From Scyliorhinus canicula (Eukaryota): a stretch of 64,000 bases of DNA. The notes beneath the pieces were generated by a model that saw only the letters and a program-made list of their open reading frames with translations, was not told where the DNA came from and made no database searches. A program made the translations under genes and the position numbers. Shown here piece by piece: positions 6,343-59,410 of the stretch. Numbering within the stretch: position 1 is the stretch's first letter; each line of letters starts with the position of its first letter. The stretch is from assembly GCF_902713615.1 (NCBI RefSeq), contig NC_052160.1:46032719-46096718 (forward strand), in the 5' to 3' direction.

Positions 6343-6477
6343 GCTTGGGCTGATGCTTTCAGGAGTAGTCCAGATCTGACTGGAGTAGTTCATATTTATG
6401 AAGAGTTGAAGAGAAAAGGAATGGAGTTCCCAATGGCTGATCTGGATGCACTGTCTCCGATACACACACCAGGGAGA
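6343..6477 (+). CDS. TOM1L2: TOM1L2 internal coding exon (end of VHS domain), [45 protein letters not shown]
   Basis: ctcctAG acceptor at 6341-6342, GTaagc donor at 6478; 135 nt, phase 0/0. Translation is nearly identical to the vertebrate TOM1L2 VHS C-terminus as I recall it. Confidence 0.97.
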
Positions 6478-10465: not shown

Positions 10466-10570
10466 TGGTTTTTCAAAATGTGAGTGGGTCTGTTTCTGTG
10501 CTTGCAATATTCTGTGTTGGCTAATCTAAGGGTTTACCCTTTGTTTTAAGTTGAGCCTTTTGTATGGCAG

Positions 10571-11663: not shown

Positions 11664-11781
11664 AACTATTTTCAATTCTCTGTTGATCTTCATTCTTCAA
11701 AATTCTTCAAACAAGAATTCTGTTTGATTGTGCTTTTGGTGACATAGAACTGATTAACATGTCCTGTATTTTTAAAATAAG

Positions 11782-11915
11782 GAACTAAACCGTACATGTC
11801 GAGCAATGCAGCAACGAGTTGTTGAACTTCTCTCCAATGTAACCAACGAAGAGATCACAGAGGAACTTCTACATGTAAATGATGATCTTAATAATGTCTT
11901 TCTTCGGTATGAGAG
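11782..11915 (+). CDS. TOM1L2: TOM1L2 exon (GAT domain), [44 protein letters not shown](R)
   Basis: taAG acceptor at 11780-11781, GTgagt donor at 11916; 134 nt, phase 0/2; contains the GAT hallmark [17 protein letters not shown]. Confidence 0.97.
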
Positions 11916-11977
11916 GTGAGTGATTACCTTGCTGCGCTGATTTCTGCTAATTATTTTCCTCATCTGCGACAGGTTTA

Positions 11978-12295
11978 GCATAGAACATAGAACATACAGT
12001 GCAGAAGGAGGCCCTTTGGCCCATCAAGTCTGCACCAACCCACTTAAGCCCTCACTTCCACCCTATCCCAATAACCCCTCCTAAACGTTTTGGAGACTAA
12101 GGGCAATTTAGCATGGCCAAACCACCTAACCTGCACGTCTTTGGACTGTGGGAGGAAACCGGAGCACCCGGAGGAAACCCACGTAAACACGGGGAGAACG
12201 TGCAAACTCCGCACAGACAGTGACCCAGCGGGGAATCGAACCTGGGACCCTGGCGCTGTGAAGTCACAATGCTATCCACTGTGCTACCGTGCTGC
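11978..12295 (-). mobile_element. Full-length V-SINE (HE1-like) with CR1-type 3' tail
   Basis: tRNA head, V core and tail ...GGCCTCCTTCTGCACTGTATGTTCTATGTTCTAT; close copy at 56565-56890. Confidence 0.9.
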
Positions 12296-28254: not shown

Positions 28255-28384
28255 ACCTGGGCGCAGATAATGTCAGTGGTACCCTCAGCTCATTGACCAA
28301 CTGCAATCCAGATGCTCGAGATTCAGCTAACTTTGATATGTTTGCACAGACCAGAAGTAATTCTCTGGCTGATCAGCGCAAAAA
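28255..28384 (+). CDS. TOM1L2: TOM1L2 exon, (D)LGADNVSGTLSSLTNCNPDARDSANFDMFAQTRSNSLADQRK(N)
   Basis: tttcAG at 28253-28254, GTaagt at 28385; 130 nt, phase 1/2; FDMFAQTRxNSLA motif. Confidence 0.96.
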
Positions 28385-28499: not shown

Positions 28500-28575
28500 T
28501 GTAACATATGAGGACTTGCAGTCAGTTGGAGGATTGGCAACTGCCATTGATGTTCGACAAAATAATGCAGCAGTG
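28500..28575 (+). CDS. TOM1L2: TOM1L2 exon, (N)VTYEDLQSVGGLATAIDVRQNNAAV
   Basis: ccttgtAG at 28498-28499, GTaaga at 28576; 76 nt, phase 2/0; VTYEDxQxVGGLA motif. Confidence 0.95.
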
Positions 28576-28809
28576 GTAAGAGCGCCAACTCTTTTTTTTT
28601 TATTGAATGAAAACATTATTTCCATGTAAATGTTTTAAGTTCTTTCACAATATTAGTATTTCAATTGAAAGATGGGTGATTAAACCAGTCATGCAAAATT
28701 TGCTTGTTACACCAAATTATAATGAACAATATAACTGAGGAATTTAATTTTCAAGAACACCCTCTATCTTTTATACTAGATTTGTTATATTTTGGTTCTA
28801 CTGTTTATT

Positions 28810-29695
28810 GTGCACGATTCTCCTGCCGCGTTGTGCTCTCGCTTCTTCAGTGCAACACCGGTCGGAGAATGCCGGGAGAGGTTTGCAGCAAGCCTCTTAA
28901 CAGACTCTGCGCCTCCTGGGATTCTCTGAAATCCTGTGAGATGTCAGATTCGAACCCCACTCCAAATAGGAGGACCCAATGACGCTCGCACAAGTAGTGT
29001 GTAAACCTACCTACCTGCGCGGGATCCACCGGCCTCCTTTGATTCTCCAGCCTCCCAGGCCAATCAATGCTGGTCCACAAAACGTGGAACAGGTGACGGC
29101 ACCCGAGGGGGTCTCCTGGGCCATCGGAGACCCCTGGGTGGTCAAGATAAGTACAAGGTGGCTCCCTGGCTCTCCCCTGGAATGCAGGCACCATGACACC
29201 TTGGCACTGCCAACCTGGCACTGTCAATGTGCCTGGATGGCACTGTCAAGCCAACAGGAGCACTGCCAGGGTGGCAGTGCCAAGGATCAGGAGGCGAGAG
29301 GTAGAATGCCCATGAAATGAGTGTGGAGGGGGCGGTTTGAAGTGTGGGGTAGTGCAGGGCAGCTAAGTAGGGGCCTCTGGGAGGTTGGGTGGGTGAGGGG
29401 GTGTGCCTGAAGAGGGGGTATCACTTAGTGTGGTATCCTCACTTGGGGGGAGGGGCGGATTGGTGCGTGTGGGGGACCATGGTTGTGGAACCCACAAGCT
29501 TGCTTAGAGATTGGGGTACCAGTGCAAAAAAAAACTTGTAAGTGTGGGCTAAACCAATGAGAAACTCCCCAGGACCCAAAGAAGTGACTAAGTGTCTTTG
29601 AATAGCAGTAGGGAACTCGTCGGCAGAGCCGGAAGGAAACTCCCTGAAGAACCCGCCACAAATTAACTTTGTTATTTTTTGGGAGAATCGCGCCC
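28810..29695. mobile_element. Non-autonomous Harbinger-like element
   Basis: TIRs GTGCACGATTCTCC / GGAGAATCGCGCCC; internal GGCACTGCCA repeats shared with 50735-51393 and 56498-57608. Confidence 0.7.
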
Positions 29696-30504
29696 ACTCT
29701 TTTGCATGTTGTGTTAACACCACAGATGGCTGCGTGGTTTGCTTTCATTTTAAACAACAGCCCCAAAGGTGCCACTAGATGATGTCATATTCATCTGCTC
29801 AATTATAAGGCTTGCGTTTAAAATATTTTGAGTGTTAAATAGCCATTGCACTTTAAAATACCTTCCCCCTTGTATTGCACTTGACCAGATACTACGAGGC
29901 TAGTGACCTGCTTTAAGACAATTCTCATTCCCTCCTGAAATTGGTTGCTAGTATCTAGAATGAATCAGCACAGGTTAAATGTCCCTTTATTGTACTTTTG
30001 GACTGATGCTTTTGCTTGACATTTACCCAATGTAATGGTTGAGATTCATGCATGGTTTGGAAAATGACCTGTAAGCTTAGCATTCAGTGACATGGCAAAT
30101 ACGTCACCAAAATATCAACCACTAGATGATTCGCCATTTCTAAAACACAAGCAATTTCTGTAATGTTAACACCTACAAAATCAAAGTGTATCCAATGGCT
30201 TGATCACATACTGCTGCTAAAGCACATACAGCTGCAGAAATATGTATTATGATTGTAGATTACAATACTGCAGATTTGAGTTGGTGATTCCCTGATTTTA
30301 TAACTCTCTTACTACAGAGAAGTTCAGAATACAGGCCATACAGCAAGGGAGAATAAAATGTTCTGTCCTCAGTTTATCCACACCTCCCAGTTAAAAATGA
30401 CAGCAGCAACATATCTTCCACTGAATTGAGCATCCCAAGGCACTTTACGTGTCAATATTGCACACTAAGCAGAAAGTAGGAGAGGGGAGGTTACTAAATG
30501 CACA

Positions 30505-30933
30505 GGGTGAGATTCTTCGCAAATGCGGAGAATCGTAAAGGCTGCCGTGGGGCAGGCCATCACCCACGGCAGCCTCCGCGCCCACTTCCGGGACCCGATT
30601 TCCCCCCCCCCCCCCCCCTTGTGACGTCAGCCGCGCATGCGCAGTTGCCGTCTTTTCCCTCAGCCGCCCCGCAAGACGTGGCGGCTTGATCTTGCCGGGT
30701 GGCGGAGGGAAAAGAGTGCGTCCGTTACGGACGCAAGGCCTGCGATCGGTGGGCACTAATCACGGGCCTGTGCCCCCCTTGGCACGGCCGTGGTACTGCC
30801 GTGCCAATTGGGCCCCTAGATGCCCCAAACGGACATCAGGCGCCCGTTTCACGACGGCAGCGACCAGGTGTGATTGCTGCCGTGTTGAAACGGGCGTGAA
30901 GGCTCGGCCCATCGGCCTCGGAGAATCGCAGTC
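30505..30933. mobile_element. GC-rich Harbinger-like MITE
   Basis: Ends GGGTGAGATTCT / AGAATCGCAGTC; CpG-rich island in AT-rich intron. Confidence 0.6.
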
Positions 30934-32509
30934 ATTGTATAAACTTTGAGGTGGCTTTTGAATGTATTGTGAGAAGATGAAGAGACTTCAGAAGATCACA
31001 GGGACATGCAGCAATGCTCTGCCATTTGAGTAAATGAAGAGGTTGTGTAATAGAGCTTCTCCCCCCACTTTCCACAGTCATTATCAAGTTTAGCTTGTAA
31101 TATATATAAGTAGGGGTGGCGTACTTAAGTCAATAAAGGGTTCTGGGTTTAAAATTACAGTCGGGTACAAAAGTGAACTTTCACTCCAAATTTAGTTTTC
31201 TCTAACTTTTATTCTGAATTGTATTAGCTGTAAGAGGGGTGGCACAGTGGTTAGCACTGCTGCTTCATGTCACTGAGGTCCCGGGTCACTGTGTGGAGTC
31301 TGCACATTCTCCCTGTGTTTGCGTGGGTCTCACCCCCCCACTACCCAAAGATGTTTAGGGTAGGTGAATTGGCCACACTAAATTGCCCCTTAATTGGGAA
31401 AATATAATTAAGTACTCCAAAAAAGTTTAAAAGCTATAATAGACTTGCACTGTAGGTGAAAATAAGAATTGTGCAATTTGCCATGATTTACTTAGTCGAA
31501 CTAAGTAAAGTGTGAAACTTCAGTTATCCTGAATGAGCAGATTTAGATTTGAATAATAAAATGGAATGATTACTGCAAATTCAAACTTTGTTTTTGTCAT
31601 CACTTGTACCAAACATTTACTCTTGGGAGGGGGGGGCTGCTATTGACTCTTGTACAGTATTCAGTCCACATTGCAGTTTTCAATTTAAAATCCTACGGGC
31701 ACCAGCCCTGTGACATCACAAGCGAACATCCGTGATAGTCTCTCCATTTTATGGAATCTTTATTTTCTTGAAATGTGTTTGGAATCCCAAAGTAATTGTA
31801 TGAAATTACAAAAGAAACTACAACTTCTCGAACTTTGTTTCTGGATAATTACTTATGTCCATGAGGATTATATACAATTTGCTTTTCTATGGTCCTTTGT
31901 GTTACTAATTGCTCCTCCCAACATTTTGTCTGTGTTTTACTAAATTTCAACAATTTAGTAATTGTCTAGGTTGCTGTTCAGTTGAGCTTAACTTCAACCC
32001 GTATTATTTGTCGTAGGGCCAACTGTAGTTATCTGTCGGTAGTTGTTGTGATTTGTCTTTTGTAGAGGCTTTTCCTTCTGGGCTTCATTCCTTTCATTTT
32101 ATATTCAAATTGCTGAAAAGGGTTATTTTACCAAATGGGTTAAGTGGAATGTTCAGACACAAGCGGAAATCACTTTTTGTATGTGTGCACATTTGATGAA
32201 ATTGCCACAGTCTTCCTAAACCAGCAAATATCAGTTTATTACTGTCATCTGGACTTTAAAGGCTGTTTCCAAATCTGTCTGAAAGGATTGGGCACGGAGG
32301 AGGCTGCAGGTGGTGTCTACGGGTAAGGCAGTGGAGCAGCTCAGAAAGGCGAGGGGTGCGGTATATGAATATGGAGAGGAAGCCAGCAGGATGCTGGCTC
32401 AGCAGCTCAAAGAGGGAGGCGGCTGGGGCAATAGGTAAAGTGGTGGATGGAGGCGGTAACTTGGTAGGGGATGCGGCAGGTGTGAACAATGTGATACTGA
32501 ACAGGTGTG

Positions 32510-35005
32510 ATATCGCCCCTTTTACCCTCCTCAGCTGCCCCTTTGCCTTACCTGTGGACAGGAGCCCAAATTCCATTTGACGTCTCTGACGCCCCTTCAG
32601 GAGCTCCTCATCCGGAGACTCCGCATATCTCCTGTCCACCTGTAAGATTTCACGTACCAGCCTGTTCAACTCCGCCCGTTCAGTCTTCTCCCTCTGGGCC
32701 CGAATCAAAATAAATTCCTTTCTGATAACTGCCTTCAATGCTTTCCAAACCACCCCTGTCATGGTCTCACCCGTGTTGTTGCTCTTTATGTATGGCCTCG
32801 AATGGCCTCCTTCACCTGCTCACAGACCTCATCCTCTGCTAGCAGCCCTACATCTAACATCCACTGCTGATGCTGGGTCTTTCCTGTGCACACCCATAGG
32901 TCTATCCAGTGTGGGGCGTGATCTGATACCACGATTGCTGAGTATTCTGAGCCCTCCACCTCTGCGAGCAGTGTTTTGTCAAGTACGAAAAAGTCTATCT
33001 TGGAATACACCTTGTGCACATGGGAGTAAAATGAATACTCCTTGCTCCTTGGCCTCCCGAATCTCCACAGATCCCCCCCCCCCCCCCCCCCCCCCACTTT
33101 CATGCTCTCCATGAACCCCCGCAGCTCATTTGCCATTGTGCGAGCCGAGGTCTGGAATCTTCCCCATCATCCTACTGACAAACGAGACATCATCCCAGTT
33201 TGGGACGTATATATTTACCAATACCACAGCCATTCCCTCCAGCATCCCACTGATCATAATCTACCTCTATCCTTCCCATCTCGAATGCCACCTTTTTATT
33301 AACCAGAATTCCCCCCCCCTTGTTTTAAAGTGCAATCCCGAATGAAACACCTGTTGCCTCAAGTGCGCGAACACATGGGCTCTTTTGACTGGCCCATTCA
33401 GTCCACGAACATTCCACGTGACCAGCCTGGTCGGGGGGCGCCCGTGCCCCACACCTCACCTGGCCCACCCCCGGGCAGCTACAATCATCCACTCTCTTCC
33501 TCCAGCACCTTAAAAGTCCCCTCCTCATCAGTAGTTTACCTCTTTCTCTTTTTCCTCCCCCCCACATTAATCTTCAGCTCACCCCCCACTTTGCTTCCAT
33601 GAACTAGTCCTCCCAGCTAGCCTGGCAGCTCCCGCCCCCTGGCGCCTAGCATCCTACCACCTGCTGGTCCCTCCCCCCCCCCTCACTCTTAGTACACGTT
33701 TCCAAAACAATGGCAAAAAGCACAAAAAAAACAAACAAACAGTCCCTCCCAAGGTCCAAGGACAAAGGCCCACCCCTCCTCCCTGAACAAAATCTCATCT
33801 AGTCAAACATCTTCAAACAGAACCAGATGGAACAGACCAAGGGAAAAAACGAAAAAGGAGCTATACATGCAGAAACTCAAACAACTTTTTGAACATCGCA
33901 AACTAAATTACAAAGTTAAAAGTTTTTACAAGGCAAAACATCACTTCTAACTCAGTTCTCCACAGTCAAGGTCCTTGTTTTTCCCATCGGGTTATTGCCC
34001 TTCATAAAGTCCGCCATGTCCTCCGGCGAGCCAAAATACAGCTTCCGACCCTCCTAGGTCACCCATAGGCGGACCTGGTAAAGCAGTCCAAACTTTATTT
34101 GCTTCTCATACAGGGATGTCTTGACTTTATTAAAGATCTCCCTCCTCTTTGCGAGTTCTGCTCTCAAGCCCTGGTATACCCGGATCTCAGCATCTTCCCA
34201 CATGCACTGTTTCGTCTGCCTGGCCCAATTCCTGATACGTTCCTTATCTCGGAACCGATGCAGTCGTACCAGCATCGCCCTCGGGGGCTCACACCCCTGG
34301 GGCTTATGCATAAGCGCTCTGTGGGCCCGGTCCACCTCCCAAAGGCTTGGGGAACGCACCCTCCCCTATCGGCTTCTCCAGCATCTTCCCCACATACACA
34401 CCGGCATCCAATCCTTCCTTCCCCTCAGGCAGACCAACAATCCAGATAGTCTGTCTCTGAGAATGATTCTCCAGGTCCTCCACTTTCTCCAGCATTCGTT
34501 TCTGTTGGTCCTGTAGCATAGCGATCTCTGCTGCCAGTGTGGTGGACTAACCTCTCGTTCCGCCGCCAGCTCCTCCAGCCTCTGGATCGCATGCCCCTGG
34601 GTCGTCAATCTCTCCTCCACACAATCGACCACTGTCCTAATCGAGTCCACCGCCCGGGCCAGGTCCTCCGCACACTCCTTGCGATGTTGAGTGAACTTCT
34701 CAGTAAAGAAGTTCACCAACTGGTCCATCGACTATTGAGCTGGTGAGGTCAGACCCTGTGTCCCTGCCATTTCCTCCTTCAAACTCTGGTCCTCACTTCC
34801 AACCCACTTCTGATTCCTCCCTTTTTCGATTTTTTTTCCTTGGGCTCAGCTCCATAAACTAGGGGTCACCTCCTTCTCATCTTGCTTTTGCACCTTTTTT
34901 TGGAAAAATTCCTGTGGAAATCCAGCTTAAAATCCACAAAAAGACCACCTAGAGCGGGAGCTGCCAAATGTGTGACCTTTCACTCCATGGCCGCCACCGG
35001 AAGTC
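32510..35005 (-). mobile_element. L1-clade LINE, 5' half (5'UTR, ORF1, inter-ORF, ORF2 endonuclease), degenerate
   Basis: 5' end GACTTCCGGTGGCGGCCATGG; ORF1 fragments (DLENHSQR..IVGLPEG, DRAHRAL); endonuclease motifs TWNVRGLN, YSKIDFF, SDHAP. Confidence 0.9.
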
Positions 35006-36128
35006 GTCCCACCTCTTCAATCAGAGCTGGGATCGTGGCAGCTTTGTTGCCTCTCAGTGACAATTCTCTACATGTGAGAAGTGTGTCCTTGCAGATTACT
35101 TGATTTGTGGAGGAGAGGGGAAATGCAGCCAAGTCCAACGCTGTCCTTCCAATAAAGGTCACCTAGATAGTGATAAGACTGGGGAAATGTGGCTTACTTC
35201 TCCCAAACCCAAGAATTCTGAGTACTTGGGCTCAGTGTTTGCAGCACTTCGCCCTGAGCAAGTTCACTCCAAGTCTGTGACCCTGGTCTAGGTAGATTAC
35301 ATGATGCACTTGACTACTGAATTTTGGGGGATGTGGATCATAGCAACATTGAGTATGTATGCACCGAGAAGTGGAATGGCAAAAAGCACGAAAAAAACAA
35401 ACAATCCCTCCCAAGGTCCAAGCACAAAGGCCCACCCCTCCTCCCTGAACAAATTAACCTTATTCAGGTCACAATTGTCTGAGTAAAGTGGCAACATGAA
35501 CACTTGGTGCAGAAATGCTGCCGCTGTAACCATCACGGATTAATGGGAGCATAGGACTGTGTTCAAGTATGACTTTTAATATCCTCGGCCTGAGATAAAC
35601 AAAACAGCTGCTTTGCTGAAGTGTGCAAGCATGATTTGGTAATGTGCTTCTTGGCTAAATACACTTTGATTGAAAGGACTTCCCGTTCAAGTGCACAAAT
35701 TTGAATTGTTTCTGGTGCTTACGTGTGTACATTTTGTGTCTGAATTTGTTATAGTTTGACCATGTAACCTGTTTATTATTCTAATCAGTTTATACTCTGA
35801 ATCTTGCCAAACGGATCATTTTGCCAGGGTATGTTATATAAATGATGGTGGAGGAATATTACTAAACAAATAAGTCCTTTATTTTTGGCCTCGTATCAAC
35901 TTCAAAGTAGAGAATAACCTTTCTCAATCCATTCATGACCATCCATTATTTTTATTATCTTCAAAGTAAAAATTATTACTTCTGTGCAAATATTTGTGTT
36001 TTTTTTGGTAAAAATTTTACCAGTGTGGTGAAGATATTCTACAGTAATCTGATGTGGATTTCTCTCTTCCTTCTTGGCTTTGTCCTTTTATTTTAAACTG
36101 CGGGGCCTGTGGGAATGTTCTGTAACAG

Positions 36129-36200
36129 ATGCAGCTGAACATTAGAACTGACAATCCAGACATCGAGCCTATAGACAAGTGGCTCATGACACAAGGAATG
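36129..36200 (+). CDS. TOM1L2: Probable alternative (cassette) TOM1L2 exon, MQLNIRTDNPDIEPIDKWLMTQGM
   Basis: aacAG at 36127-36128 after an AG-free stretch of about 82 nt, GTgagc donor at 36201; 72 nt, phase 0/0, open in the TOM1L2 frame, in TE-free intron. It lies between the VTYED exon and the IPVA exon. Confidence 0.8.
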
Positions 36201-38354
36201 GTGAGCTTTCACCACTTTGATCTACTGTACCCTGCTAAACAACCTGCAGTACCCCCGTAACAACACCCTTACTGATTCAACACTGCACAGTAAAAGACCA
36301 GACAGATGAGTGTATCTATACAGTACAGCATACATTATTCTAAGCCTATTTTATGTTGAAATTTGCACTGTATTGGAGAAGTATGTATATGATTGTATGT
36401 CTTCTATACTTACACGAACAAATACTGATTCTTCCAGTGGAAAATACAGCTTGTCCTGGTCTTGGAAAACACTCAGTGCCCTCGACTTCTTACAGTTTGT
36501 CACCCAGTGTCAACATTGAGCATTTCAAGGTTAAAGGTAGTGCAGCCAACTACCAAGTCACTTTTCCTTTACCTTACTCCAACAATGTGTCTTAGCACCA
36601 CCTGGTTAAATCTTTCCACTCCCCAACCTTGCAATCCTTGTGGTCTCGGGACAATAGTAGTGCCTGAAACAAAGCAGTGTGATATTCACTCATGTGCACT
36701 AAGCACTAGGTTGAACTACCCAAACTCCTTTCATGTAAAACCATAGAAACTGACAAACAAAGGCTCCTATCTGACTGTTTAGATATTTGGATAACCAAAT
36801 TAAAATCAACCATTCAGTGCACTGAACCAACAGAAAATGCAGAAAAGTGGTTCATTTTTCTGGTGGGGTGGCAGGGCAGTGGGGAGAAAAACATGTATTT
36901 TGTCAGACTTTGTGTTGGGCACCTGGGTGTCTCCATATTCTTTTTGTGTAGCAATCGTAGTCGTCCTCTTCTGATTTAAGCAACAAATAAATTGGTCTTT
37001 TACTATACAGTTTGGAATGTATTTTAACAAGATTCCTTTTAACTTAGTATTCATTAACTGTGTTGCACCTACTGATTGTCTAGGTCCTAGAAGCAAATAA
37101 ACAACTAATAATTTACGTTGTTAAAATAATAATTAAGACATTTTTCATTTTTGAAGAAAGATGTTATTTCTTATTGTATTTGATTGCAACCTGTTTGAGG
37201 TTTCTTACTTGCCCTGTATTAAATTCTACACCCTATGATTATGACCGAGTTTTTTACCTACTCTACACTCATCGTTAAATAACCCTCAACTTCTCTAGTT
37301 CTCAGCTCTTCCCTGCTCCTTATTCAATGACGCTGAATTCTGAGTTCTTCACAATTCAACAGTATAATTTAAATTGGACTTTGTTTTGTTTCCTTGCCGA
37401 ATGATCAATTTTCATAATCATCTGTAGATTGACACTGGGCCAATTCTCACATGCAAACAAAGACCTTGTACAGGAGAGATTGCAATGAACCTGAGGTGTA
37501 CTCTAATCTTATTCTCAATTTTGTTAGTGTAAATGCAACTGCTTCTGTTTTCCAAAGTTGTCCAATTAGAGTAACTGTGTGCATTTAGTGTTGGTTTTAT
37601 GCTGGGAAAAATTTAGAGGCAAAGCAATGTGAATATTAGCTGAAATGCTGATGAATCCGCTTCATAAAATTGGAATAATGGCATGGATAAAGTATATTTG
37701 TTGGTATGGACAGAGCCTTGTGTTGCATAGAAGCATATAGAAAATCACTGGAGGTTCTGGGACAGCATAAGTGGGTCAGGCCCATTCAAGTCCACAATTT
37801 TGAGTTAATTTAATGAGCCTCTTAAGGCAGTAGCAGGCTTAGTGTTGTGGTAGTAGGTAAACACAGTACTCTGTACCCTATACTATATGGACCAGGTGGT
37901 CCCAAGTTTGATTTCTGGTTTATGTCTTGGCTGGTCTCAGCTGAGATGGTAGTTGATGATGCCATAGTTTGCATGGCATCATTCAGCAAAGGAGAACCAA
38001 GAAATTGATTTAAAAATAGAAAATGGAATATGAGAGTAAACTTGTGAGGAACGTAAAAATGGACTGTAAAATCACAAGAATGTAAAAGGGAAAGGTTAGT
38101 GAAGAAAGCTATGAACCTACTACAGTCAGAGAATGGAGAATTTATAAGAAAATGGCAGAGAACGAACACATACTTTTTGTGTCTGTCTTCACAGAAGAAG
38201 ATACAAGAAACTGCCCTGAAATATTGGAGAACCAAAGGACTAGTGAAACTGAGGACCTGAAAAATTAGTATTAGTAAAAGAAATAATGCTGGATAAATTA
38301 ATGGGACTGAAAGTTGATGAATCTCCTGGACCTGAGTATTTACATCGCAGTGTT

Positions 38355-41300
38355 TTTGTTTAACAAACAATTTTGTTGAGGTATTTTTTGGCATTGAAAA
38401 CAGTTACAGATAACAGAAATATGCAAACATCAACGTAAAACCAATACTTCAATCAAACCATAATGCACATACTTGCTCCTCTCCTGTAAACACCACCCGC
38501 CTATTTATAAACTTGACATGTCCGAAAGCCAAAGTTCGGTCTTAGGGGGTTTTGAGTCCCTCCATGCCAGCAGTATTCGTCACCGGGCTATCAGGGAAGC
38601 AAAGGCCAGAACATCGGCCTCTTTCTCCCCCTGGACTCCCGGGTGTTCCGAAACCCCGAAAATTGCCACCCCTGGACTCATCACCACCTTTGTTTTCAGC
38701 ACCTTGGGCATGACTCCCGCAAATCCCTCCCAGTACCCCCTAAGCTTAGGGCATGTCCAAAACATGTGAACGTGGTTCGCTGGTCCTCCCGCGCATCTAG
38801 CGCACTTGTCCTTTACCCCAAAGAATTTGCTCATCCGAGCTACCGTCATGTGGGCCCGGTGAACGACCTTAAATTGAATCAGGCCGAGCCTGGCACGTGT
38901 TGCAGTTGGGTTTACCCTACTCGGGGCTTCCGCCCACAGCCCGTCCTCCATCTCCCCGCCAAGCTCCTCCTCCCATTTGAGTTTCAGTTCCTCTGTCTGG
39001 GACTCTTCCCCCTTCAGAAGATGGTAAAAGAGGGGGGAGTGTGGCATTGTTAATCAAGGAAAGTATTACGGCGGTAGAAAGGACGTTTGAGGATTCGTCT
39101 ACTGAGGTAGTATGGGCCGAGGTTAGGAACAGGAGAGGAGAGGTCACCCTGTTGGGAGTTGTCTATAGACCTCCGAATAGTTCCAGAGATGTAGAGGAAA
39201 AGATTGCAAAGATGATTCTCGACAGGAGCGAGAGTAACAGGGTAGTTGTTATGGGGGACTTTAACTTTCCAAATATTGACTGGAAATACTATAGTTTGAG
39301 TACTATAGATGGGTCAGTTTTTGTACAGTGTGTGCAGGAGGGTTTTCTGACACCGTATGTAGACAGGCCAACAAGGGGCGAGGCCACATTGGATTTGGTA
39401 CTGGGTAATGAACCCGGCCAATTGTTAGATTTACATGTAGGTGAGCACTTTGGTGATAGTGATCACAACTCGGTTATGTTTACTTTAGCAATGGGCAGGG
39501 ATAGGTATATACCGCAAGGCAAGAATTATAGCTGGGGGAAAGGCAATTATGATGCTATTCGGCAAGATTTAGGATGTAGAGGATGGGGAAGGAAACTGCA
39601 GGGGATGGGTACAATCGAAATGTGGAGCTTTTTCAAGGAACAGCTAGTGCATGTCCTTGATAAGTATGTACCTGTCAAGCAGGGAGGAAGTTGTCGAGCA
39701 AAGGAACCGTGGTTTACTAAGGAAGTTGAAGCACTTGTCAAGAGGAAGAAGAAGGCTTATGTTAGGATGAGACATGAAGGCTCAGTTAGGGCACTTGAGA
39801 GTTACAAGTTAGCCAGGAAGGACCTAAAGGGAGAGTTAAGAAGAGCGAGGAGAGGACACGAAAAGTCGTTGGCGGGTAGGATCAAGGAAAACCCTAAGGC
39901 TTTCTATAGGTATATCAAGAACAAAAGAATGACTAGAGTAAGATTAGGGCCAATCAAGGATAGTAGTGGAAAGTTGTGTGTGGAATCAGAGGAGATAGGG
40001 GAAGCGTTAAATGGATATTTTTTGTCAGTGTTTACACTGGAGAAAGACAATGTTGTCGAGGAGAATACTCTGGTTCAGTCGACCAGGCTAGATGGAATTG
40101 GGGTTCAAAAGGAGGAGGTGTTAGCAATTTTGGAAAATGTCAAAATAGATAAGTCCCCTGGGCCAGATGGGATTTATCCTAGGATTCTCTGGGAAGCCAG
40201 GGAGGAGATTGCAGAGCCTTTGTCCTTGATCTTTATGTCGTCTTTGTCGACAGGAATAGTGCCAGAAGACTGGAGGGTAGCAAATGTTGTCCCCTTGTTC
40301 AAGAAGGGGAATAGAGACAACCCTGGTAATTATAGACCTGTGAGCCTTACTTCGGTTGTGGGTAAAATGTTGGAAAAGGTTATAAGAGATAGGGTTTATA
40401 ATCATCTAGAAAAGAACAAGTTGATTAGCGATAGGCAACACGGTTTTGTGAAGGGTAGGTCATGCCTCACAAACCTTATTGAGTTTTTTGAGAAGGTGAC
40501 CAAACAGGTGGATGAGGGTAAAGCGGTTGATGTGGTGTATATGGATTTCAGTAAGGCGTTTGATAAGGTTCCCCACGGTAGGCTATTGCAGAAAATAAGG
40601 ATGTATGGGCTTGAAGGTGATTTAGCGGTTTGGATCAGTAATTGGCTAGCTGAAAGAAGACAGAGGGTGGTGGTTGATGGCAAATGTTCATCCTGGAGTT
40701 CAGTTACTAGTGGTGTACCGCAAGGATCTGTTTTGGGGCCACTGCTGTTTGTCATTTTTATAAATAACCTGGAAGAGGGTGTAGAAGGATGGATTAGTAA
40801 ATTTGCAGATGACACGAAGGTCGGTGGAGTTGTGGATAGTGCTGAAGGATGTTATAGGATACAGAGGGTCATAGATAAGCTGCAGAGCTGGGCTGAGAGG
40901 TGGCAGATGGAGTTTAATGCGGAAAAGTGTGAGGTGGTTCACTTTGGAAGGAGTAACAGGAATGCAGAGTACTGGGCTAATGGCAAGATTCTTGGTAGTG
41001 TAGATGAACAGAGAGATCTCGGCATCCAGGTACATAAATCCCTGAAAGTTGCCACCCAGGTTAATAGGGCTGTTAAGGCATATGGTGTGCTAGCCTTTAT
41101 CAGCAGGGGGATTGAGTTTTGGAGCCACAAGGTCATGCTGCAGCTGTATATAACTCTGGTGCGGCCGCACCTGGAGTACTGCGTGCAGTTCTGGTCACCA
41201 CATTATAGGAAGGATGTGGAAGCTTTGGAAAAGGTTCAGAGGAGATTTACTAGGATGTTGCCTGGTATGGAGGGACGGTCCTACGAGGAAAGGCTCAGGG

Positions 41301-44115
41301 ACTTGAAGTTGTTTTCGTTAGAGAGGAGAAGGCTGAGAGGTGACTTAATAGAGACATATAAGATAGTCAGAGGGTTAGATAGGGTGGACAGTGAAAGTCT
41401 TTTTCCTCGGATGGTGATGACCAACACGAGGGGACATAGCTTTAAATTGAGGGGTGGTAGATATAGGACAGATATCAGAGGCAGTTTCTTTACTCAGAGA
41501 GTAGTAGGGGTGTGGAACGCCCTGCCTGCAACAGTAGTAGACTCGCCAACTTTAAGGGCATTTAAGTGGTCACTGGATAGACATATGGATGAAAATGGAA
41601 TAGTGTAGGTCAGATAGGCTTCAGATGGTTTCACAGGTCGGCGCAACATCGAGGGCCGAAGGGCCCATACTGCGCTGTAATGTTCTATGTTCTATGAGCA
41701 CCTTGTAAATATCCGAGACTCTACCCTCTCCTCCTTCTCCTCTATAGACTATTCTGTCCTGGATCCCTATTGGCGGGAGGCGTGGGAAGGATGGGACCTG
41801 TCTGTGTACAAAGTCCCACATCTGTAAGTCCCTAAAGTCATTTCCCCTTACCAGCCCAAATTTCTCCTCCAAACTCCTCAGACCCGCAAAGCTCCCCTCC
41901 AGGAACATATCGCTCACCCCTGCCCGCCGCCATGTTCGAAACCCTCCATCCATGTTCCCGGGGGTGAATCGATGGTTATCACATTGCAGCCCAGACAGAC
42001 GCACCCATCTCCCCTACATGCCTCCTCTACTGGCCCCATATCCGCAGGGCCGCCCCCACTACCGGGCTGGTGGAGTACCTGGCCGCCGAAAGCGGTAGGG
42101 GAGCCGTGGCCAGGGCTGCCAAACTGGTGCCCCTGCACGAAGTCGCCTCCACTCGCTCCCAGATAGACCCCGTACCACCTTCCACTTCCTTATCATGGCT
42201 ATGTTAGCCGCTCAGTTGTAGTTGATCAGACTCAGCAATGCCAGTCCTCCCTCGCTGCGGCTCCTTTCAAGCATTGCCTTCTTCACCCGCGGGGATTTTC
42301 CCGCCCAGACAAAGCTCATGATGATTTTGCCAGTCCTTTTCAAGAAGGACCGTGGGATAATGATCGGGAGGCACTGGAAGATGAACCGGAATCTAGGGAG
42401 GATCGTCATCTTTACAGTCTGCACCCTCCCCGCCAGTGACAGCGGGAGTGCATCCCATCTCCGAAACTCCCTCTGCATTTGTTCCACCACTCTAGTCAAA
42501 TTTAGCTTATGCAACCTGCCCCAGTCTCGTGCCACCTGTATCCCCAAGTACCGGAAACTTTCCCCAACCAGCCTAATTGCAGCTCCTTCAGTCTATTCTC
42601 CTGGCCCCTTGCCTGCACCACAAACATCCCACTCTTGGCCATATTTAATTTGTACCCTGAGAACCGGCTGAACTTCCTTAATGTTTCCAGTATATTTTCC
42701 ATCCCGGCCAGTGGGTCCGATACGGACTGGAGCAGGTCGTCCACCTAGAGAGAGACCCTGTGTTCCACCCCCCCCTTGTCATTTCATTCCACCCCTCCCC
42801 TTGTCATTTCATTCCACCCCTTTGCAGCTCTCAATGCAATCGCCAACGGCTCTATGGCCAGCGCGAACAGCAACGAGGAGAGTGGGCATCCCTGTCTGGT
42901 CCTGCAATGTAGTCTGAAATAATCTGACATTATCTTGTTCGTCCTAACGCTAGCTTTTGGGGCCTGGTCTGACCCTATTAACCAGTCCTTCCTGAACCCA
43001 AACTGTCCAAGCACCTCCCACAAATAGCCCCACTCCACCCGGTCGAAGGCCTTCTCAGCGTCCATTGCCACCACTACCTCCACCTCCTTGCCCGTCGGGG
43101 GCATCATGATCACATTAAGCAATCTTCTCAAGTTAGCTGTCAGCTGCCTGCCTTTCACAAACCCTGCCTGATCGACCCCAATCACCTCCGGTATGCAGTC
43201 CTCGATTCTAATCGCCAGGAGCGTGGCATCCACATTGATCAGGGAGATTGGCCTATATGACCCGCAGGATTCCGGGTCCTTGTCCCGCTTCAATATCAGC
43301 GAGATGGTGGCTTGCGACATCGGCGGCGGCAGGGTCCCTCTGTCCCTTGCCTCATTTAAAAACCCTAGTCAGGACCAGTCCCACTATCTCCGAGAACTTC
43401 TTGTAAAACTCTACTGGGTATCCATCTGGCCCCGGGGCTTTCCCTGACTGCATGGCCTTTAGGCCCCCCAATACCTCCTCCGCTCTAATCGGGGGCCCCC
43501 AGCCCGTCCGCTAGTCCCCCGCCTACTTTTGGGAAAGTTAGTCCGTCCAGGAACCTTTTCATCTCCTCCGGCTCTTCCGGGGGTTCTTAAGGGTACAGCT
43601 TACTATAGAAGTCCTGAAATACCTTATTCAGTCCTGCCGGGTCCTCCACTCTGCTCCCCTCCCCATCAACCACTCTACTTATTTCCCTGGCCGCCTCCCT
43701 CTTCCTGAGTTGCTGCGCCAGCAATCTGCTGGCCTTCTCCCCATGCTCATACACCACTCCCCTTGCCTTCCTAAATTGTTCCACGGCCCTACTCGTGGAT
43801 AGCACCCCCAGTTCCGCCTGCACTCTCCGTCTCTCCCTGAGTAGGTCCTCCCCTGGGGACCCCACATGCTCCTCTATCCGGTAAATCTCCCTAACCAATC
43901 TGTCCATTTCTGCTCTATCCGCCCTGACCCTGTGAGCCCGAATTGAGATCAGCTCCCCCCTCGCTACTGCCTTCAGCGTCTCCCACAGGGTCGCTGATGA
44001 AACCTCCCCCGTATCATTCACCTGCATGTAAATTTGCATACACTTCCGCAGTCTCTCACAAATCCCCTCCTCCGACAACAATCCTATGTCTAACCTCCAT
44101 TGCGGGCGTTGGTAA

Positions 44116-44151
<36 letters not shown>

Positions 44152-44220
44152 ACCTGCAGGTCCACCCAATGCGGGGCATGGTCCGAGATAGTGATTGCCG
44201 AGTATTCAGTATTCTTTACC
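38355..44220 (-). mobile_element. L1-clade LINE (ORF2 EN end, RT, C-terminus) interrupted by a younger CR1 and inserted in an older CR1
   Basis: ORF2 fragments (YRPISLIN, MDAEKAFDRVEW, RQGCPLS, HMFWTCP); 14-bp TSD TACATC(G/C)CAGTGTT at 38341-38354 and 44221-44234; old CR1 sequence resumes on both sides. Confidence 0.88.
39015..41695 (+). mobile_element. Young 5'-truncated CR1 LINE with an uninterrupted 855-aa ORF2 segment (39041-41608)
   Basis: APE motifs VYRPPN, GDFNFP and SDH; RT motifs DFSKAFDKVPH, GVPQGSVLGP and FADD; 3' tail (ATGTTCT)n. Confidence 0.97.
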
Positions 44221-46331
44221 TACATCCCAGTGTTGACTGAGGTGGCAATATAGATAGTGGATGCATTGATCATCTTTCAAAATTCTATAGATTCTGGAAC
44301 AGTGTCCACTGATTAGAAGGTAGCAAATACCTTCTATTTAAGAAAGGAAGGAGGAGAACTGCAGATTTGTTAGTCTGACATCAGTAGTCGGGAATATGCT
44401 AGAATCTGTTATAAAGGATGTGATAACGGGCACTCTGAAAATAATGGTGTGATTGGGCAGAGTCGGCATGGATTTATGAAAGGGAAATTCTGATTCACAA
44501 ACATGTTGGGAGTTTTGAAAGATGTTACGAGCAGGATAGATAAGGGAGAACCAGTGGATATGGTGTGTTTGGATTTTCAGGAAGCTTTGAATAAGGTCCC
44601 ACATAAATGATTTGTAGGCAAAATTAGAGTACATGGGAATAGAGGTAGTATACTGGCAGGGATTGAGGATTGGATAATGGACAAAAAACGAGAGTAGGAA
44701 TAAATTGGTAATTTTCAGGTTGGCAGGCTGTGATTGGTGGGGTGCTGCAAGGATTAGTGCTTCGGCTCCAGCCATTCACAATCTATACCAATGATTTGGT
44801 TATGGGGACCAAATTTAATCATTTCAAGTTTGTTGATGACACAAAACTTGGCGGGAATATGGGTTGTGAAGACCTTTCTTGGATCTTTTGAATCTTTTAT
44901 CTGGTGCTGTCTTTTGATTTTATATACGCTAGGTGAATGCCACACATGCAATAACATATTACTGTTTGCCCAGTTTGAACGTGTTGCTGCTCATAGTTAA
45001 TTATGGGGTTTTTTCTCCCTCTGGCTGAAGCCACCAATTGAATGGAAACTAAAGTATCCCTTTTTTTTACAGGTTGATTTTTCAGTGTTTACAAATTCAC
45101 TCAATGGGGGTGAAATTGGCCTGCCCAAATTGAATTGGCCGCCCATTTTAATAAAAATCTTGAAACTACGCACACTTCAGTGTACAGTTATCCAGGAAAT
45201 AGGACAAAATTACCTTTTATTGGAATTTTTCAATAATACAGGAAAACAAATGAAATGGTGGAAAAGGCAACTTTTTGCACCGCTTTATTAAGCTGTTTTT
45301 AAGATGATGCGAGTAAAGTTCTGGAATTTGATCTGGGCATATTCATTGTAGTTCAACACAAAAGTCTGTTTCTTGAATTGATGCTTATCTCTAAGAAGCA
45401 GATTACAAAAATCTTTGGAACAAAATCTATATAATTTTCTATACATTGACCGTGGCTACCTGAAGCTACAGTAATGTTCAACAATTCCATAATTTTTTAT
45501 GGCTTAATATTTGCAAAAAACCTCTGTATAACCCACCTCACATGAGAGAATTCATACTTTGCTCACTTTTATAAAACAGAAGTGCACTATTTCTGTGAGG
45601 AAGTGCCTTACTGCTCCATCATGCCTTGCCTAACATCATGGCTCACATTGGAAACTCAGTGTATGGGGATCTGAGAGTGCATGCTATATAATCTCTGGCA
45701 TGATGTTTGAGCCCTAAAATGCTGCATCAATCACAATTTATTTAGAAAAGCATCTCTAAGTAACCTTATAACACAGACTCTATCTGTAGAGTATCAGATA
45801 GCCACAAACGCATACCAAAGCTATGCCCTGGAATAAAGATACAAGCTAACACAAAACAATGATACAACTCTACAAAGCCCATCATCACGAAGAAGGCAGG
45901 AGACTCAACATCCCCAACATAGCTAAACCCCATGGACTAAAAAAAACTATTCCCCCCCCCCAATTCGATGCACTGCTTCCAATATGATGGTGAACATATA
46001 AATACTGAGTAGTTTTTCAAAATAAACGTACCATTCTCTTTTGTTTTGAAGAATTTTTAAAGTGACAATGTAAAATGTTTTCTCCAGTGTATGCCTCATT
46101 GAGGGTCATCTTTGTTTCCAAAAGATGCCCTCAGCTGGTTCATGTACTCATTTTAATTTTTGAATCATTGTTGAAACTTGGTGTGTTTTTATTATGAATT
46201 CTTTTATTGTGTTTTTATATTTTGGTGAATTGTCTTTTTTATGGATCTTCATTCCCATTCTAAGTTTTGTTTTTTCTTTTTTTCTTTTAATGTTATGTTT
46301 ACTTTGGTTTGGTTTTCCCATTGCTGTGTAG

Positions 46332-46388
46332 ATTCCTGTCGCAAAGTCTATCATGGACGATGTTGAAGAATGGCTCAGCACTGATGTG
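46332..46388 (+). CDS. TOM1L2: TOM1L2 exon, IPVAKSIMDDVEEWLSTDV (myosin VI-binding region)
   Basis: Long T-rich tract plus gtgtAG at 46330-46331, GTatgg donor at 46389; 57 nt, phase 0/0. Corresponds to IPVAQPSVMDDIEVWLRTDL of mammalian TOM1L2. Confidence 0.93.
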
Positions 46389-48344
46389 GTATGGGGCTTT
46401 TGCTTTTTTTTTTTTTGCTTTGAATAGAAGTTCTCTCAGTACCACTTTTTTCTCTTTTTTTTCACTCCCATCTCCCGCACCCACCAAATGATTGCCTCAG
46501 GAATGATTACATGGTGCTCCTACCTAACTAAATAAAATCTAAAACACACCAGAATGTGAAATACACAGACTTGTGGTTTGAATTACATTCTGTTCTTTAA
46601 GTATTGGCTTGCAAAGGAATATCCAGCCACTTGTTATCAATAGGGGGAGGGGATTCTGCCTGTTTGCGTGTGTATATTCTTACACGTGCACAAGCTGCTT
46701 TGATAGAATTCTACATTCCAAAACCATTCATGAGTCTTGCTGTATAGCTCATAGACCTTAATACTGACTCTGACATAAATTGAAAATGCTGTCACTGTGA
46801 GAGACCGGAAGAGATTACAACATACTCACTCCAAACTGAGATCCAGGTAAAAATCTTTTTCTTCTCATTGCATCAACTATTCACAGACTGACATTGACTA
46901 AGACTAGATAAATTAGGCCAATGTTCTAAAACTACTGGCAGAGTGTTTATAACACATTGGCAGCATTTTCCGTTGCAGAGTTTAAGTGGAAATTTGGGAC
47001 TGGTCCTCACTGGCATTGGGAGCAGCGCCCAAGTGCGAATCACAGTCCTTTGGCATGCAAATATGTGCAGGGCGGCAAGTGCATTGGATTCCCATCACTT
47101 TCTGACTCAGGCCGCCGTTCGGAAAAGTCGTCCAGATACAAATCCTGTGACAGGCCCCACCTCCCGCACAGCAGAAGTGTCAACCACCACAGAAATAATG
47201 GGTAAACCACCCCCACACCTCACTACGTAAGAGTGACCACACTCGCCAGTACCCCTGCCCTTCAACCACCCTTCAGTCCCTGCCCCCGGCATTGCCACCA
47301 ATGCACTGACACATGGTACTGACACTCTGGCAGTGACACCCTAGCCAAGCATGATGGACTCGAGGGGGAGGGTCAAACTAAGTGCTGTGGTTACAAATTA
47401 GGAAATGATGTGGTCAGGAGCTGTTAATCATGGGTATTTATAAACAGTGTGGTTAGGATCAATGGAGGGTACTTGACATGCATTCAAGCGTGAAAGGAAA
47501 GATAAATAAACAACCTCCCAGCGGCTGTATCTGATAAGTTGTCAATCTCAGGCTAGTAAAAGGTACTGCTCTATGAAATCGAATGGATACTTAGCATTCC
47601 AAAGAATCGCACGGGACCTCCAGCCTTTTCAAGTGTTAAAGGCTTTCTAGGAAGGCTCTGACACTTCAAAAATCTGCAGGGTGCAATCCTCCGGCCACGT
47701 TATGCTGGAGAAGCAGCTTGCCGTGGCGCAGCATGGCAGGTGAAAGCCGGGAGACCCTGCACCCGGGATCTACCCTGTTCGCAACATCTTGCGAGATTCA
47801 ACACAATCTGTGAGACGTTGCAAGTGGAATCCCGCACATATTGGGCGGGATCACCTTTTAGCAAATCTGCACATTAGAGCGAGGCAGTAAGCCATTGCTT
47901 CTAGAATAAACCCAACTACTTCATTTTTATGTTATATCTTCAGTTGCTGCATGATTCATGGATAGATAAGCTAAAATCATCAGTATAGTTCATACTACAC
48001 TTTGTTTTTTGTCCAAGGCAATGCATACTGAAATATTAATTCTCATCAGATTTTTATTAAATATTAATTCTAATCAAAAAATTATATCTCTGTTTAAATT
48101 GGTTACACACTTACGGGCAGGAGAGAAAGTTGAAGTGCAAGAGCCTTTTTGCAACCTTATCCAAGGGAGTAATGATTCATAGATGGCTCTCACGTGATAT
48201 GTCAGAAAGAAAGTATCCTCTAATTACTTTTGAAGTACACATGTATTTTGTTTAAGTCCACAGCCCATTATCTAAGGAAAGATAAATTGGCATTGGAGAC
48301 GGTCCAAGAAGATTCACTGGGTTGATCCTGGATCTAAAATAGAT

Positions 48345-48530
48345 GGGGCCTGTACTCTGGTTTAGCTCACTGAGCTAAATCGCTGGCTTTTAAAGCAGAC
48401 CAAGCAGGCCAACAGCACGGTTCGAATCCCGTACCAGCCTCCCCGGACAGGTGCCGGAATGTGGCGACTAGGGGCTTTTCACAGTAACTTAATTAAAGCC
48501 TACTCGTGACAATAAGCGATTTTCATTTCA
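48345..48530 (+). mobile_element. Third short tRNA-derived SINE (tail GGCTTTTCACAGTAACTT...(ATTTC)n; tail fragment also at about 50889-50960)
   Basis: Box A/B-like TTAGCTCA..G and GGTTCGAATCCC; repeated tail. Confidence 0.7.
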
Positions 48531-49404
48531 CTGGAGATTAGAAAAATGAGAAGTGGGCGGCAAAGCGGTTCGCACTGCTGCCTCATGGCGCTGAGGACCC
48601 GGGTTCGATCCCGGGCCCGGGCCACTGTCCGTGTGGAGTTTATACATTCTCCCGTGTTTACATGGCTTTCACTCCCACAACCCAAAAGATGTGCAGGCTA
48701 GGTGGAGTGGCTATACTAAATTGCCCCTTAATTTGGGAAAAAAATTAATTGTATATTCTAAATTTATTTATTTTTTAAATGAGAGGCAACCTTATTGCGA
48801 CATACAGAATTCTCGGGGGCTTGACCAGGTAGATCCTGAGGAGTTGTTTTTCCCCCCCTTAGGAGAGTCCAGGACAAGTCATAACCTCCAAGTAAGGGGT
48901 CACCCATTTAAGACCGAGATGAAGAGTAACTTCTTCTGAGGGTTGCGAATTTGTGGAAGTCTTAACTGCAGAGAGCTGTAGAGGCTGGGTCATTGAGTAT
49001 GTCCAAGGGTGAGATACAGATTTCTAATCAGTATGGGAATCTAGGGTTATTGAGATAAGGCAGGAAAGCGGAGTTGAACCAAATAGTTAGCACTGCTGCC
49101 TTACAGGGACCCGGGTTTGATTCCGCCCCTGGGCGACTGTCTGGTGGTAACAAGTTCTCCCCATGCCTGTGTGGGTTTCCTCCGAGTGATTGGGTTCCTG
49201 CCACAGTCCAAAGATGTGCAGGTGAGGTGGATTGGCTATGCTAAATTGCCCCTTAGTGTTCAATAGCTATGTGGAGTTGCAGATTAGGCCACGGTAGGGC
49301 ACTATTTTGGAGAGTCTGTACAGATGTAATGGCTGAATGGCCTCCTTCTGCACCGTAGAGATTCTATGATTATCATTTTAGATCAGTCATGTCTTTGAAT
49401 GGAA

Positions 49405-57608: not shown

Positions 57609-57859
57609 ATGGACTGTCTTCCAGCAATGTTGCCTTTTCCTTGTGGTCGGGAGAAAATAACAGATTACATTCAGATTTACCCTCTGGTTTTGAAAGGCAG
57701 AAGCTTTCAACTTTTCAACACTTTTTTTAAAGTGGCAACAAATTTATGTCTTATCTAATCTCTCAAATCTGCTTGCATTGACGTGCAGGGTGAGTTGTTT
57801 TAAATCTCATGGTATTAAATTGTTTTGTTACATATTCTCAAAATAATCAGGTTGGGTGG

Positions 57860-59258: not shown

Positions 59259-59410
59259 GGGGCGGAATTCTCTGAATTCCCGGGGGGTCGGAGAATCTCC
59301 CGGGGCCGGCGTCAATCCCGCCTCGGCCATGTCCCGAATTCTCCACCCCCCGAGATTCGGCGGGGCGTGAATCACGCCACGCCGGTCGGCGCATTGGTTG
59401 GCGGGCCCCC

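What the first reader, a model, noticed from the sequence alone, without database searches (positions are those of the whole stretch)
36045..36206. Extra 72-nt TOM1L2 exon encoding a second I-x-x-W-L motif upstream of the canonical myosin VI-binding exon
Seen: a phase-0/0 exon with good splice sites translating MQLNIRTDNPDIEPIDKWLMTQGM. Its core (D)IEPIDKWL aligns with IMDDVEEWL of the exon at 46332 (acidic residues, hydrophobic residue, two spacers, WL). Known: TOM1/TOM1L2 bind the myosin VI cargo-binding domain through a C-terminal IWL motif, and this exon is not in the canonical human isoform as I recall it. Inference: an ancient exon duplication gave two independently skippable in-frame cassettes, so isoforms could carry 0, 1 or 2 myosin VI sites, changing avidity or motor clustering. 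Here the canonical exon has V at the I position while the extra exon keeps I. I vaguely recall similar 'EPIDxWL.TQGM' peptides in other vertebrate isoform predictions, so the exon may already be annotated while the duplicated-motif reading may not be.
Basis: partly seen in the sequence, partly recalled or inferred. Interest (0 to 1): 0.72.

Follow-up and report, generated by a model that had tools for sequence, protein, structure and literature searches.

The report
Conserved extra TOM1L2 exon, second WL motif
The 72-base exon is real, is spliced into TOM1L2 mRNA exactly as predicted and is conserved in a distant vertebrate, but the W-L motif it duplicates is the published BBSome (cilia) binding motif, not the myosin VI site.

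Summary
Observation confirmed. Window 36129-36200 is an in-frame 72-nt exon (AG/GT) encoding MQLNIRTDNPDIEPIDKWLMTQGM. A 338-nt contig of a public run (X1, 100% identical) joins exon end 28575 to 36129 and 36200 to 46332, so it is spliced into mRNA. A degenerate-pattern scan found the same exon (RRGKGGNSDMEPIDKWLITQGM, 66 nt) 7.3 kb upstream of the canonical WL exon in a TOM1L2 locus of an unidentified, non-human vertebrate (metagenome contig L003). The exon core is the only nucleotide-level match between the two loci (88% over 59 nt).

Interpretation only partly holds. Hu 2019 (PMC6673701) showed that the IExWL motif does not contact myosin VI; the binding helix lies further downstream ([10 protein letters not shown]...; PDB 6J56). 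Shinde et al. (10.1101/2022.09.23.509287) mapped (E)VWLR as the BBSome-binding motif and found MYO6 binding unaffected by its mutation. The extra exon is therefore best read as a second BBSome-type WL motif, 20 residues upstream of the first. Exon duplication is not demonstrable (shuffle p about 0.02, driven by W-L). Not tested: exon skipping in this species, tissue pattern, and any binding. No full-length isoform could be retrieved, so I could not check whether the exon is already annotated.

The parts
36129..36200 (+). Extra 72-nt coding exon (24 aa, phase 0/0) of the TOM1L2-like gene
   Evidence: sequence and translation; the spliced contig of run X1 covers it with both junctions.
36153..36200 (+). 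Conserved core NPDIEPIDKWLMTQGM, containing the I-D-K-W-L motif
   Evidence: No differences at 36152-36200 in relatives C and D, against about 7-9 changes per 100 nt in the adjacent intron. 88% identity over 59 nt to L003 586-644, the only blastn hit between the loci.
36127..36134 (+). Tandem acceptors: AG at 36127-8 (used in X1) and AG at 36133-4, 6 nt downstream and in frame
   Evidence: the X1 contig starts at 36128/9. Relatives X13 and X14 have 36127 A>T, which leaves only the downstream AG and would give a 66-nt exon, the same length as in L003.
36201..36206 (+). Donor site GTGAGC
   Evidence: GTGAG is identical in L003.
28500..28575 (+). Upstream constitutive exon (..VTYEDLQSVGGLATAIDVRQNNAAV), joined to 36129
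28255..28384 (+). Preceding exon (..[43 protein letters not shown])
   Evidence: It lies within the 210-nt upstream part of the X1 contig; only the last 30 of those letters were seen.
46332..46388 (+). Canonical WL exon IPVAKSIMDDVEEWLSTDV, the counterpart of the published BBSome-binding motif exon, joined to 36200
   Evidence: motif assignment from Shinde et al..
11782..11916 (+). GAT-domain exon of the host gene (approximate borders)
   Evidence: Pfam GAT 50 bits, E 3.6e-13. PDB Target of Myb protein 1 GAT, E 4e-17.
6343..6477 (+). Exon holding the C-terminal end of the VHS domain (approximate borders)
   Evidence: Pfam VHS positions 116-141 of 141, 16 bits, a partial domain below the cut-off; splice context.

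Best explanation
A real, deeply conserved, in-frame exon of the VHS-GAT adaptor gene TOM1L2. When included, it inserts 24 residues (22 in other species) between ..RQNNAAV and IPVAKS... Its conserved 16-residue core, N-x-D-[IM]-E-P-I-D-K-W-L-[MI]-T-Q-G-M, carries a second copy of the I-[DE]-x-W-L motif, with its W 20 residues upstream of the W of the constitutive copy.

The constitutive copy is the experimentally mapped BBSome-binding motif of TOM1L2, and the myosin VI-binding helix lies in a later exon. The most likely effect of inclusion is therefore a TOM1L2 isoform with two BBSome-type W-L motifs and an unchanged MYO6 site. That would change avidity or geometry of BBSome (or other W-L reader) engagement rather than motor binding.

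Shown: the exon, its splicing, its conservation and the motif. Inferred: that the second W-L motif binds the BBSome. My odds: exon real and spliced about 0.97; conserved beyond the shark lineage about 0.9; acts as a second BBSome-type site about 0.35-0.4.
For: Splicing: the X1 contig joins 28575^36129 and 36200^46332 with no mismatch. Runs X1, X4-X8 and X10-X12 hold the exon words but are not among the holders of the adjacent 1-kb intron.

Constraint: there is no change in the 3' 49 nt of the exon in two relatives that are about 92% identical in the flanks. The same exon, in the same position relative to the canonical WL exon and the [10 protein letters not shown] exon, is present in L003. Its core is the only nucleotide-level match between the 13-kb and 64-kb loci (E 2e-13). 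Synonymous differences are 3 in 16 codons in the core against 10 in 19 in the canonical exon.

Motif function: Shinde et al. mapped 389-VWLR-392 as the minimal BBSome-binding motif, noted QWLS in TOM1, proposed a W-L dipeptide as the common determinant, and found MYO6 binding unaffected.

Host gene: GAT and VHS hits.
Against: No binding was or could be tested here. The similarity between the two exons is at motif level only (p about 0.02). The residue after W-L is M or I rather than the R or S of the mapped motifs. The strict conservation of EP..TQGM, which has no counterpart in the canonical motif, hints at a different or additional reader. Skipping of the exon in this species was not shown. 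A 2025 preprint questions how central the TOM1L2-BBSome route is in cilia.
Confidence: 0.45

Rival explanations
1. One reading: the exon adds a second myosin VI cargo-binding-domain site, so isoforms carry 0, 1 or 2 MYO6 sites.
For: An earlier report (ref 45 of Hu et al., seen only through) implicated the IExWL motif in MYO6 binding. The motif resemblance itself is real.
Against: Hu 2019: the W423 side-chain signal is unchanged on titration, Tom1 392-437 does not bind, and 437-463 suffices. The 6J56 peptide matches the last exon only and matches neither WL exon. Shinde et al.: mutating or deleting the motif leaves MYO6 binding intact.
Confidence: 0.07
2. The conserved exon serves a different reader or role. 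Its core, D[IM]EPIDKWL[MI]TQGM, would be a short linear motif for some other partner, or a regulated spacer that changes access to the neighbouring BBSome and MYO6 sites. The W-L match to the next exon would then be coincidental or convergent.
For: Conserved residues extend beyond the I-[DE]-x-W-L pattern (E-P before it, T-Q-G-M after it) and have no counterpart in the canonical exon. The duplication signal is weak. The N-terminal third of the exon is free to vary.
Against: No candidate partner emerged. The peptide has no match in PDB other than a designed helix bundle, and no paper holds the peptide.
Confidence: 0.4
3. A pseudo-exon or splicing noise with no function.
For: The stretch between the putative branch point and the AG is G-rich and a weak polypyrimidine tract. 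Only one spliced contig was seen.
Against: The contig depth is 14.4. The exon keeps frame, motif, donor and position in a locus that otherwise shares no alignable DNA, and its core is invariant in two relatives.
Confidence: 0.03

Closest known systems
BBSome-binding motif (BBM) of TOM1L2, 388-EVWLR-392 / minimal VWLR; QWLS in TOM1 (Shinde et al., bioRxiv 10.1101/2022.09.23.509287)
   Same: An acidic residue, one spacer, then a W-L dipeptide preceded by an aliphatic residue (IDKWL against IEVWL), in the same disordered C-terminal region of the same protein, 20 residues away.
   Different: It lies in a separate, apparently optional exon. It is followed by M or I and T-Q-G-M rather than R or S and T-D. 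It is preceded by a proline. No binding data exist.
Myosin VI-binding motif of Tom1 (residues 437-463; PDB 6J56; Hu et al. 2019, PMC6673701)
   Same: It is also a short helical motif in the TOM1-family C-terminal tail.
   Different: The key residues F444, F447, L448, A452..L458, P459, L461 ([12 protein letters not shown]..LPNL) have no counterpart in the extra exon. In L003 that motif lies in the last exon. It is not in this window.
Conserved alternative cassette exons that add or remove short linear motifs in disordered regions
   Same: Short, length a multiple of three, in a disordered tail, and with nucleotide conservation higher than the neighbouring constitutive exon, including at synonymous sites.
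   Different: Skipping and tissue regulation were not shown here. No RBFOX-type GCAUG was found within 400 nt.

Membership tests
TOM1 family (VHS-GAT adaptor) gene, TOM1L2 orthologue | GAT domain | tested here: met
   PF03127, 50 bits against a cut-off of 31. TOM1 GAT structures, E about 4e-17.
TOM1 family (VHS-GAT adaptor) gene, TOM1L2 orthologue | VHS domain | tested here: inconclusive
   only the last 26 profile positions lie in the window (16 bits, below the cut-off). The N-terminal exons are outside the window.
TOM1 family (VHS-GAT adaptor) gene, TOM1L2 orthologue | TOM1L2 rather than TOM1 or TOM1L1 | not testable with these tools
   No full-length reference could be retrieved. The assignment rests on my recollection of TOM1L2-specific stretches ([31 protein letters not shown]).
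Expressed, conserved cassette exon | In-frame exon with AG/GT that is joined to both neighbouring exons in mRNA | tested here: met
Expressed, conserved cassette exon | Conserved in other species at the same position in the gene | tested here: met
   L003, an unidentified non-human vertebrate; two close relatives.
Expressed, conserved cassette exon | A skipping isoform (28575^46332) coexists | not tested
   The single read-laying run covered 35121-37280 only. The human isoforms used by Shinde et al. are numbered without such an insert, which suggests skipping or absence there.
BBSome-binding motif (Shinde et al.) | x-W-L-x core with a preceding acidic and an aliphatic residue | tested here: met
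   I-D-K-W-L-M/I.
BBSome-binding motif (Shinde et al.) | W/L-dependent capture of the BBSome | not testable with these tools
Myosin VI-binding motif (Hu et al. 2019) | Helix carrying the F444/F447/L448/A452...L458/P459/L461 equivalents | tested here: not met
   no such residues and no match to 6J56_C. The last exon of L003 does match it.
Tandem exon duplication | Significant sequence similarity between the two exons | tested here: inconclusive
   BLOSUM62 local score 27, shuffle p 0.021, with random pseudo-exons reaching 24. The DNA match is 7 nt only. Both exons are phase 0/0.

The most novel reading that the evidence does not exclude
Alternative inclusion of a roughly 450-million-year-old exon switches TOM1L2 between a monovalent and a bivalent BBSome adaptor (two W-L motifs 20 residues apart). 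This would tune retrieval of ubiquitinated GPCRs from cilia in particular tissues, independently of myosin VI binding.
Probability: 0.25. Interest if true: 0.7.

Novelty: new member of a known kind. Interest (0 to 1): 0.5.

Why it matters
TOM1L2 is the proposed adaptor between K63-ubiquitinated ciliary receptors and the BBSome, and its single W-L motif is the only mapped contact. An optional second W-L motif, conserved at nucleotide level between a cartilaginous fish and another vertebrate, would give a simple isoform-level control of that contact. It is directly testable with the published GST-capture assay. The result also corrects an outdated premise: the IExWL motif is not the MYO6 site, so work on this exon should be aimed at cilia and the BBSome, not at motor clustering. 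I found no paper that mentions the exon or its peptide. Whether genome annotations already list it could not be checked.

Tried and rejected
1. The search of protein representatives with the exon plus 7 intron-encoded residues gave one hit, P0001, a 1441-aa tandem-repeat protein. This hit is spurious. TOM1L2 orthologues collapse into a few 50% clusters, so the blank says little.

2. The search for homologous proteins with spliced 54-aa and 68-aa queries found no candidates in the 30-119 aa length window. With the 101-aa open frame around exon 28255-28384 it found two Logan fragments, P0002 and P0003. Their contigs, L001 and L002, stop before the relevant exons. No full-length TOM1L2 isoform was obtained, so annotation status in other species is unknown.

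3. I built alignment A1, with a long unrelated scaffold row, to get past the length window. I abandoned it because MAFFT broke the exons into pieces.

4. PDB searches with both WL peptides matched only a de novo designed helix bundle.

5. Paper searches for the peptide and for TOM1L2 cassette exons found nothing relevant. Tumbarello 2012 is not held.

6. A genome-contig scan for the pattern gave 0 hits, as expected for prokaryotes.

7. The splicing-regulator motif scan found no GCAUG within 400 nt and only generic CU-rich tracts upstream.

8. The taxon of L003 could not be determined. Rfam, tandem-repeat and ORF scans were uninformative. It is not human TOM1L2 or TOM1, because its motif reads EEWLS rather than the human VWLR or QWLS quoted.

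Full report
**1. What is in the sequence**

Window 36129-36200 is a 72-nt open stretch. It is preceded by ..ctgtaacAG and followed by GTGAGC, and it translates to MQLNIRTDNPDIEPIDKWLMTQGM. The upstream exon ends in phase 0 at 28575 (..VTYEDLQSVGGLATAIDVRQNNAAV). The next exon, 46332-46388, reads IPVAKSIMDDVEEWLSTDV.

The host gene is a VHS-GAT adaptor. One exon at 11782-11916 hits Pfam GAT at 50 bits and matches TOM1 GAT structures at E about 4e-17. The exon at 6343-6477 holds the last 26 positions of VHS. I call it TOM1L2 from memory of TOM1L2-specific stretches, because no reference protein could be fetched. Interspersed repeats suggest a cartilaginous fish; this is my guess and was not tested.

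**2. Is it more than chance?**

The 17.7-kb intron between 28575 and 46332 holds 826 open AG..GT phase-0/0 pseudo-exons of 45-150 nt. Only this locus carries [IVLM][DE]xWL. Across all three + frames of the 64-kb window the motif occurs three times, and two of those are in these two exons.

**3. Expression**

The exon words are held by 18 runs from 9 studies. I laid four runs on 35121-37280.

- **Run X1** (organism A, no mismatch) has a 338-nt contig of depth 14.4 whose piece 36128-36200 is flanked by loose ends. These ends occur exactly once in the window, at 28545-28574 and at 46332-46361. The G at 36128 is shared with 28575.
- **Run X2** (organism B) shows only unspliced contigs, which could be pre-mRNA or DNA.
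- **Intron control:** the adjacent intron 36230-37280 is held by large DNA-sized runs of organism B and partly by a few small runs. X1, X4-X8 and X10-X12 hold all the exon words but are not among the intron holders. This fits spliced RNA in three further studies, but I could not lay them.
- **Not tested:** skipping (28575^46332).

**4. Conservation**

*Close relatives.* Organisms C and D (runs X13 and X14, about 92% identity in the flanks) differ in the exon only at 36138, 36147 and 36151. All three changes are non-synonymous (N>D, T>A, D>G) and lie in the first third of the exon. There is no change at 36152-36200, against about 7-9 substitutions plus indels in the next 100 nt of intron. Both relatives have 36127 A>T, which destroys the upstream AG. 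An in-frame AG 6 nt downstream (36133-4) would give a 66-nt exon.

*A distant vertebrate.* A degenerate DNA pattern for E-P-I-D-x-W-L-x-T-Q-G-M plus GT (about 50 bits) found one contig in the JGI metagenome collection, Ga0065711_1002003, held as L003. It carries the following:

- a 66-nt exon at 564-629, RRGKGGNSDMEPIDKWLITQGM, with ..caacacAG and GTGAGG;
- the canonical exon at 7900-7959, IPVAQSSVMDDIEEWLSTDL, 7.3 kb downstream;
- a last exon ..[23 protein letters not shown]...SEDALFAL*.

L003 is a vertebrate TOM1L2-type locus. It is not human, because human TOM1L2 reads VWLR and human TOM1 reads QWLS.

A blastn of L003 against the window gives a single hit, the core of the extra exon plus its donor (88% over 59 nt, E 2e-13). 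The canonical exon is found only by tblastx. Synonymous differences number 3 in 16 codons in the core against 10 in 19 codons in the canonical exon. That is the pattern expected of an old, regulated exon, and the near-saturation in the canonical exon argues for a very deep split. The species of L003 remains unknown.

**5. What the motif is**

- **Hu et al. [quoted passage not shown] The W423 signal does not move on titration, Tom1 392-437 does not bind, and 437-463 is sufficient. The contacts are F444, F447, L448, A452, A454, A455, L458, P459 and L461.
- **PDB check:** the crystallised 27-residue peptide (6J56_C) aligns to the last exon of L003 ([20 protein letters not shown]). It matches neither WL exon. 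That exon is not in this window.
- **Shinde et al.** (bioRxiv 10.1101/2022.09.23.509287) mapped the BBSome-interacting region of TOM1L2 to residues 384-413 and, by alanine scan, to 388-EVWLR-392, with VWLR as the minimal motif. They noted QWLS in TOM1 and proposed the W-L dipeptide as the common BBSome-binding determinant. Mutating or deleting it did not affect MYO6 binding.

Hence 46332-46388 is the BBSome-motif exon. The extra exon duplicates that motif class (IDKWL), with its W 20 residues upstream of the canonical W.

**6. Exon duplication?**

The best local peptide alignment is IEPIDKWLMT against MDDVEEWLST, with a score of 27 and shuffle p 0.021. Unrelated pseudo-exons reach 24, and the DNA shares only TGGCTCA. 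The shared phase and motif are compatible with an old duplication, but the sequences cannot show it.

**7. Most likely mechanism**

- **Shown:** a conserved exon inserts 22-24 residues just upstream of the BBSome-interacting region, leaving that region and the MYO6 helix intact.
- **Inferred:** the conserved core acts as a second W-L docking motif and gives a bivalent isoform. My odds are about 0.35-0.4.
- **Rival of about equal weight:** the core is read by another partner, or modulates access to the neighbouring sites. The strictly conserved E-P and T-Q-G-M have no counterpart in the canonical motif.
- **Other rivals:** a second MYO6 site is unlikely (about 0.07) and splicing noise is very unlikely (about 0.03).
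- **Caveat:** a 2025 preprint argues that TOM1L2 may act downstream of a CFAP36 route rather than on IFT trains. That affects where a bivalent isoform would matter, not whether the motif binds.

**8. Novelty and limits**

I found no paper that mentions the exon or its peptide. The reading as a second BBSome-type motif appears new. I rate it a new member of a known kind, of moderate interest.

Noticed in passing
window 1116-6131: A stretch of about 5 kb of CT-rich, microsatellite-like low-complexity DNA that is open in all three + frames. It encloses two N runs (5052-5441 and 5473-5955), which were left untouched.
   Followed up: no
window about 10222, 12075, 24789, 26404, 27076 (+ strand frames): Several copies of an interspersed repeat whose translation reads ..NLAWP.HLTCTSLDCGRKPEHPEETH..CKLHT.. 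There are also reverse-transcriptase-like open frames, for example at 53740-54273. These are the basis for my untested guess that the genome is a cartilaginous fish.
   Followed up: no
window 36127-36134: Tandem in-frame acceptors lie 6 nt apart. The two related organisms have lost the upstream AG (36127 A>T), which predicts a 66-nt exon there, the same length as in L003.
   Followed up: partly
window about 7766-7940: An exon encoding ..IPEVDPAMNKPMPPSLQKNTNSLPSAPSALTAYSVPQGLPTGPITANVEQ.. From memory, it corresponds to the roughly 50-residue segment that separates the long and short human TOM1L2 isoforms, so it would be another optional exon of the same gene.
   Followed up: no
L003 (Ga0065711_1002003) 1-13170: A 41.7-kb contig in a JGI metagenome is vertebrate nuclear DNA holding the 3' half of a TOM1L2 gene. 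It is host or contaminant DNA, repeat-poor, with GC 48.6% and CpG o/e 0.49. The species is unknown.
   Followed up: partly
window 35121-35248, 36010-36289, 36383-36556: Run X2, which is transcriptome-sized, has low-depth unspliced contigs over intron sequence around the exon. These could be pre-mRNA or DNA carry-over. The runs of study P9 hold much of the intron too.
   Followed up: no
window 46389-64000: The exon with the myosin VI-binding helix ([10 protein letters not shown]) was not found in the 17.6 kb downstream of the canonical WL exon, so the next intron probably runs beyond the window. In L003 it is only 3.2 kb away.
   Followed up: partly
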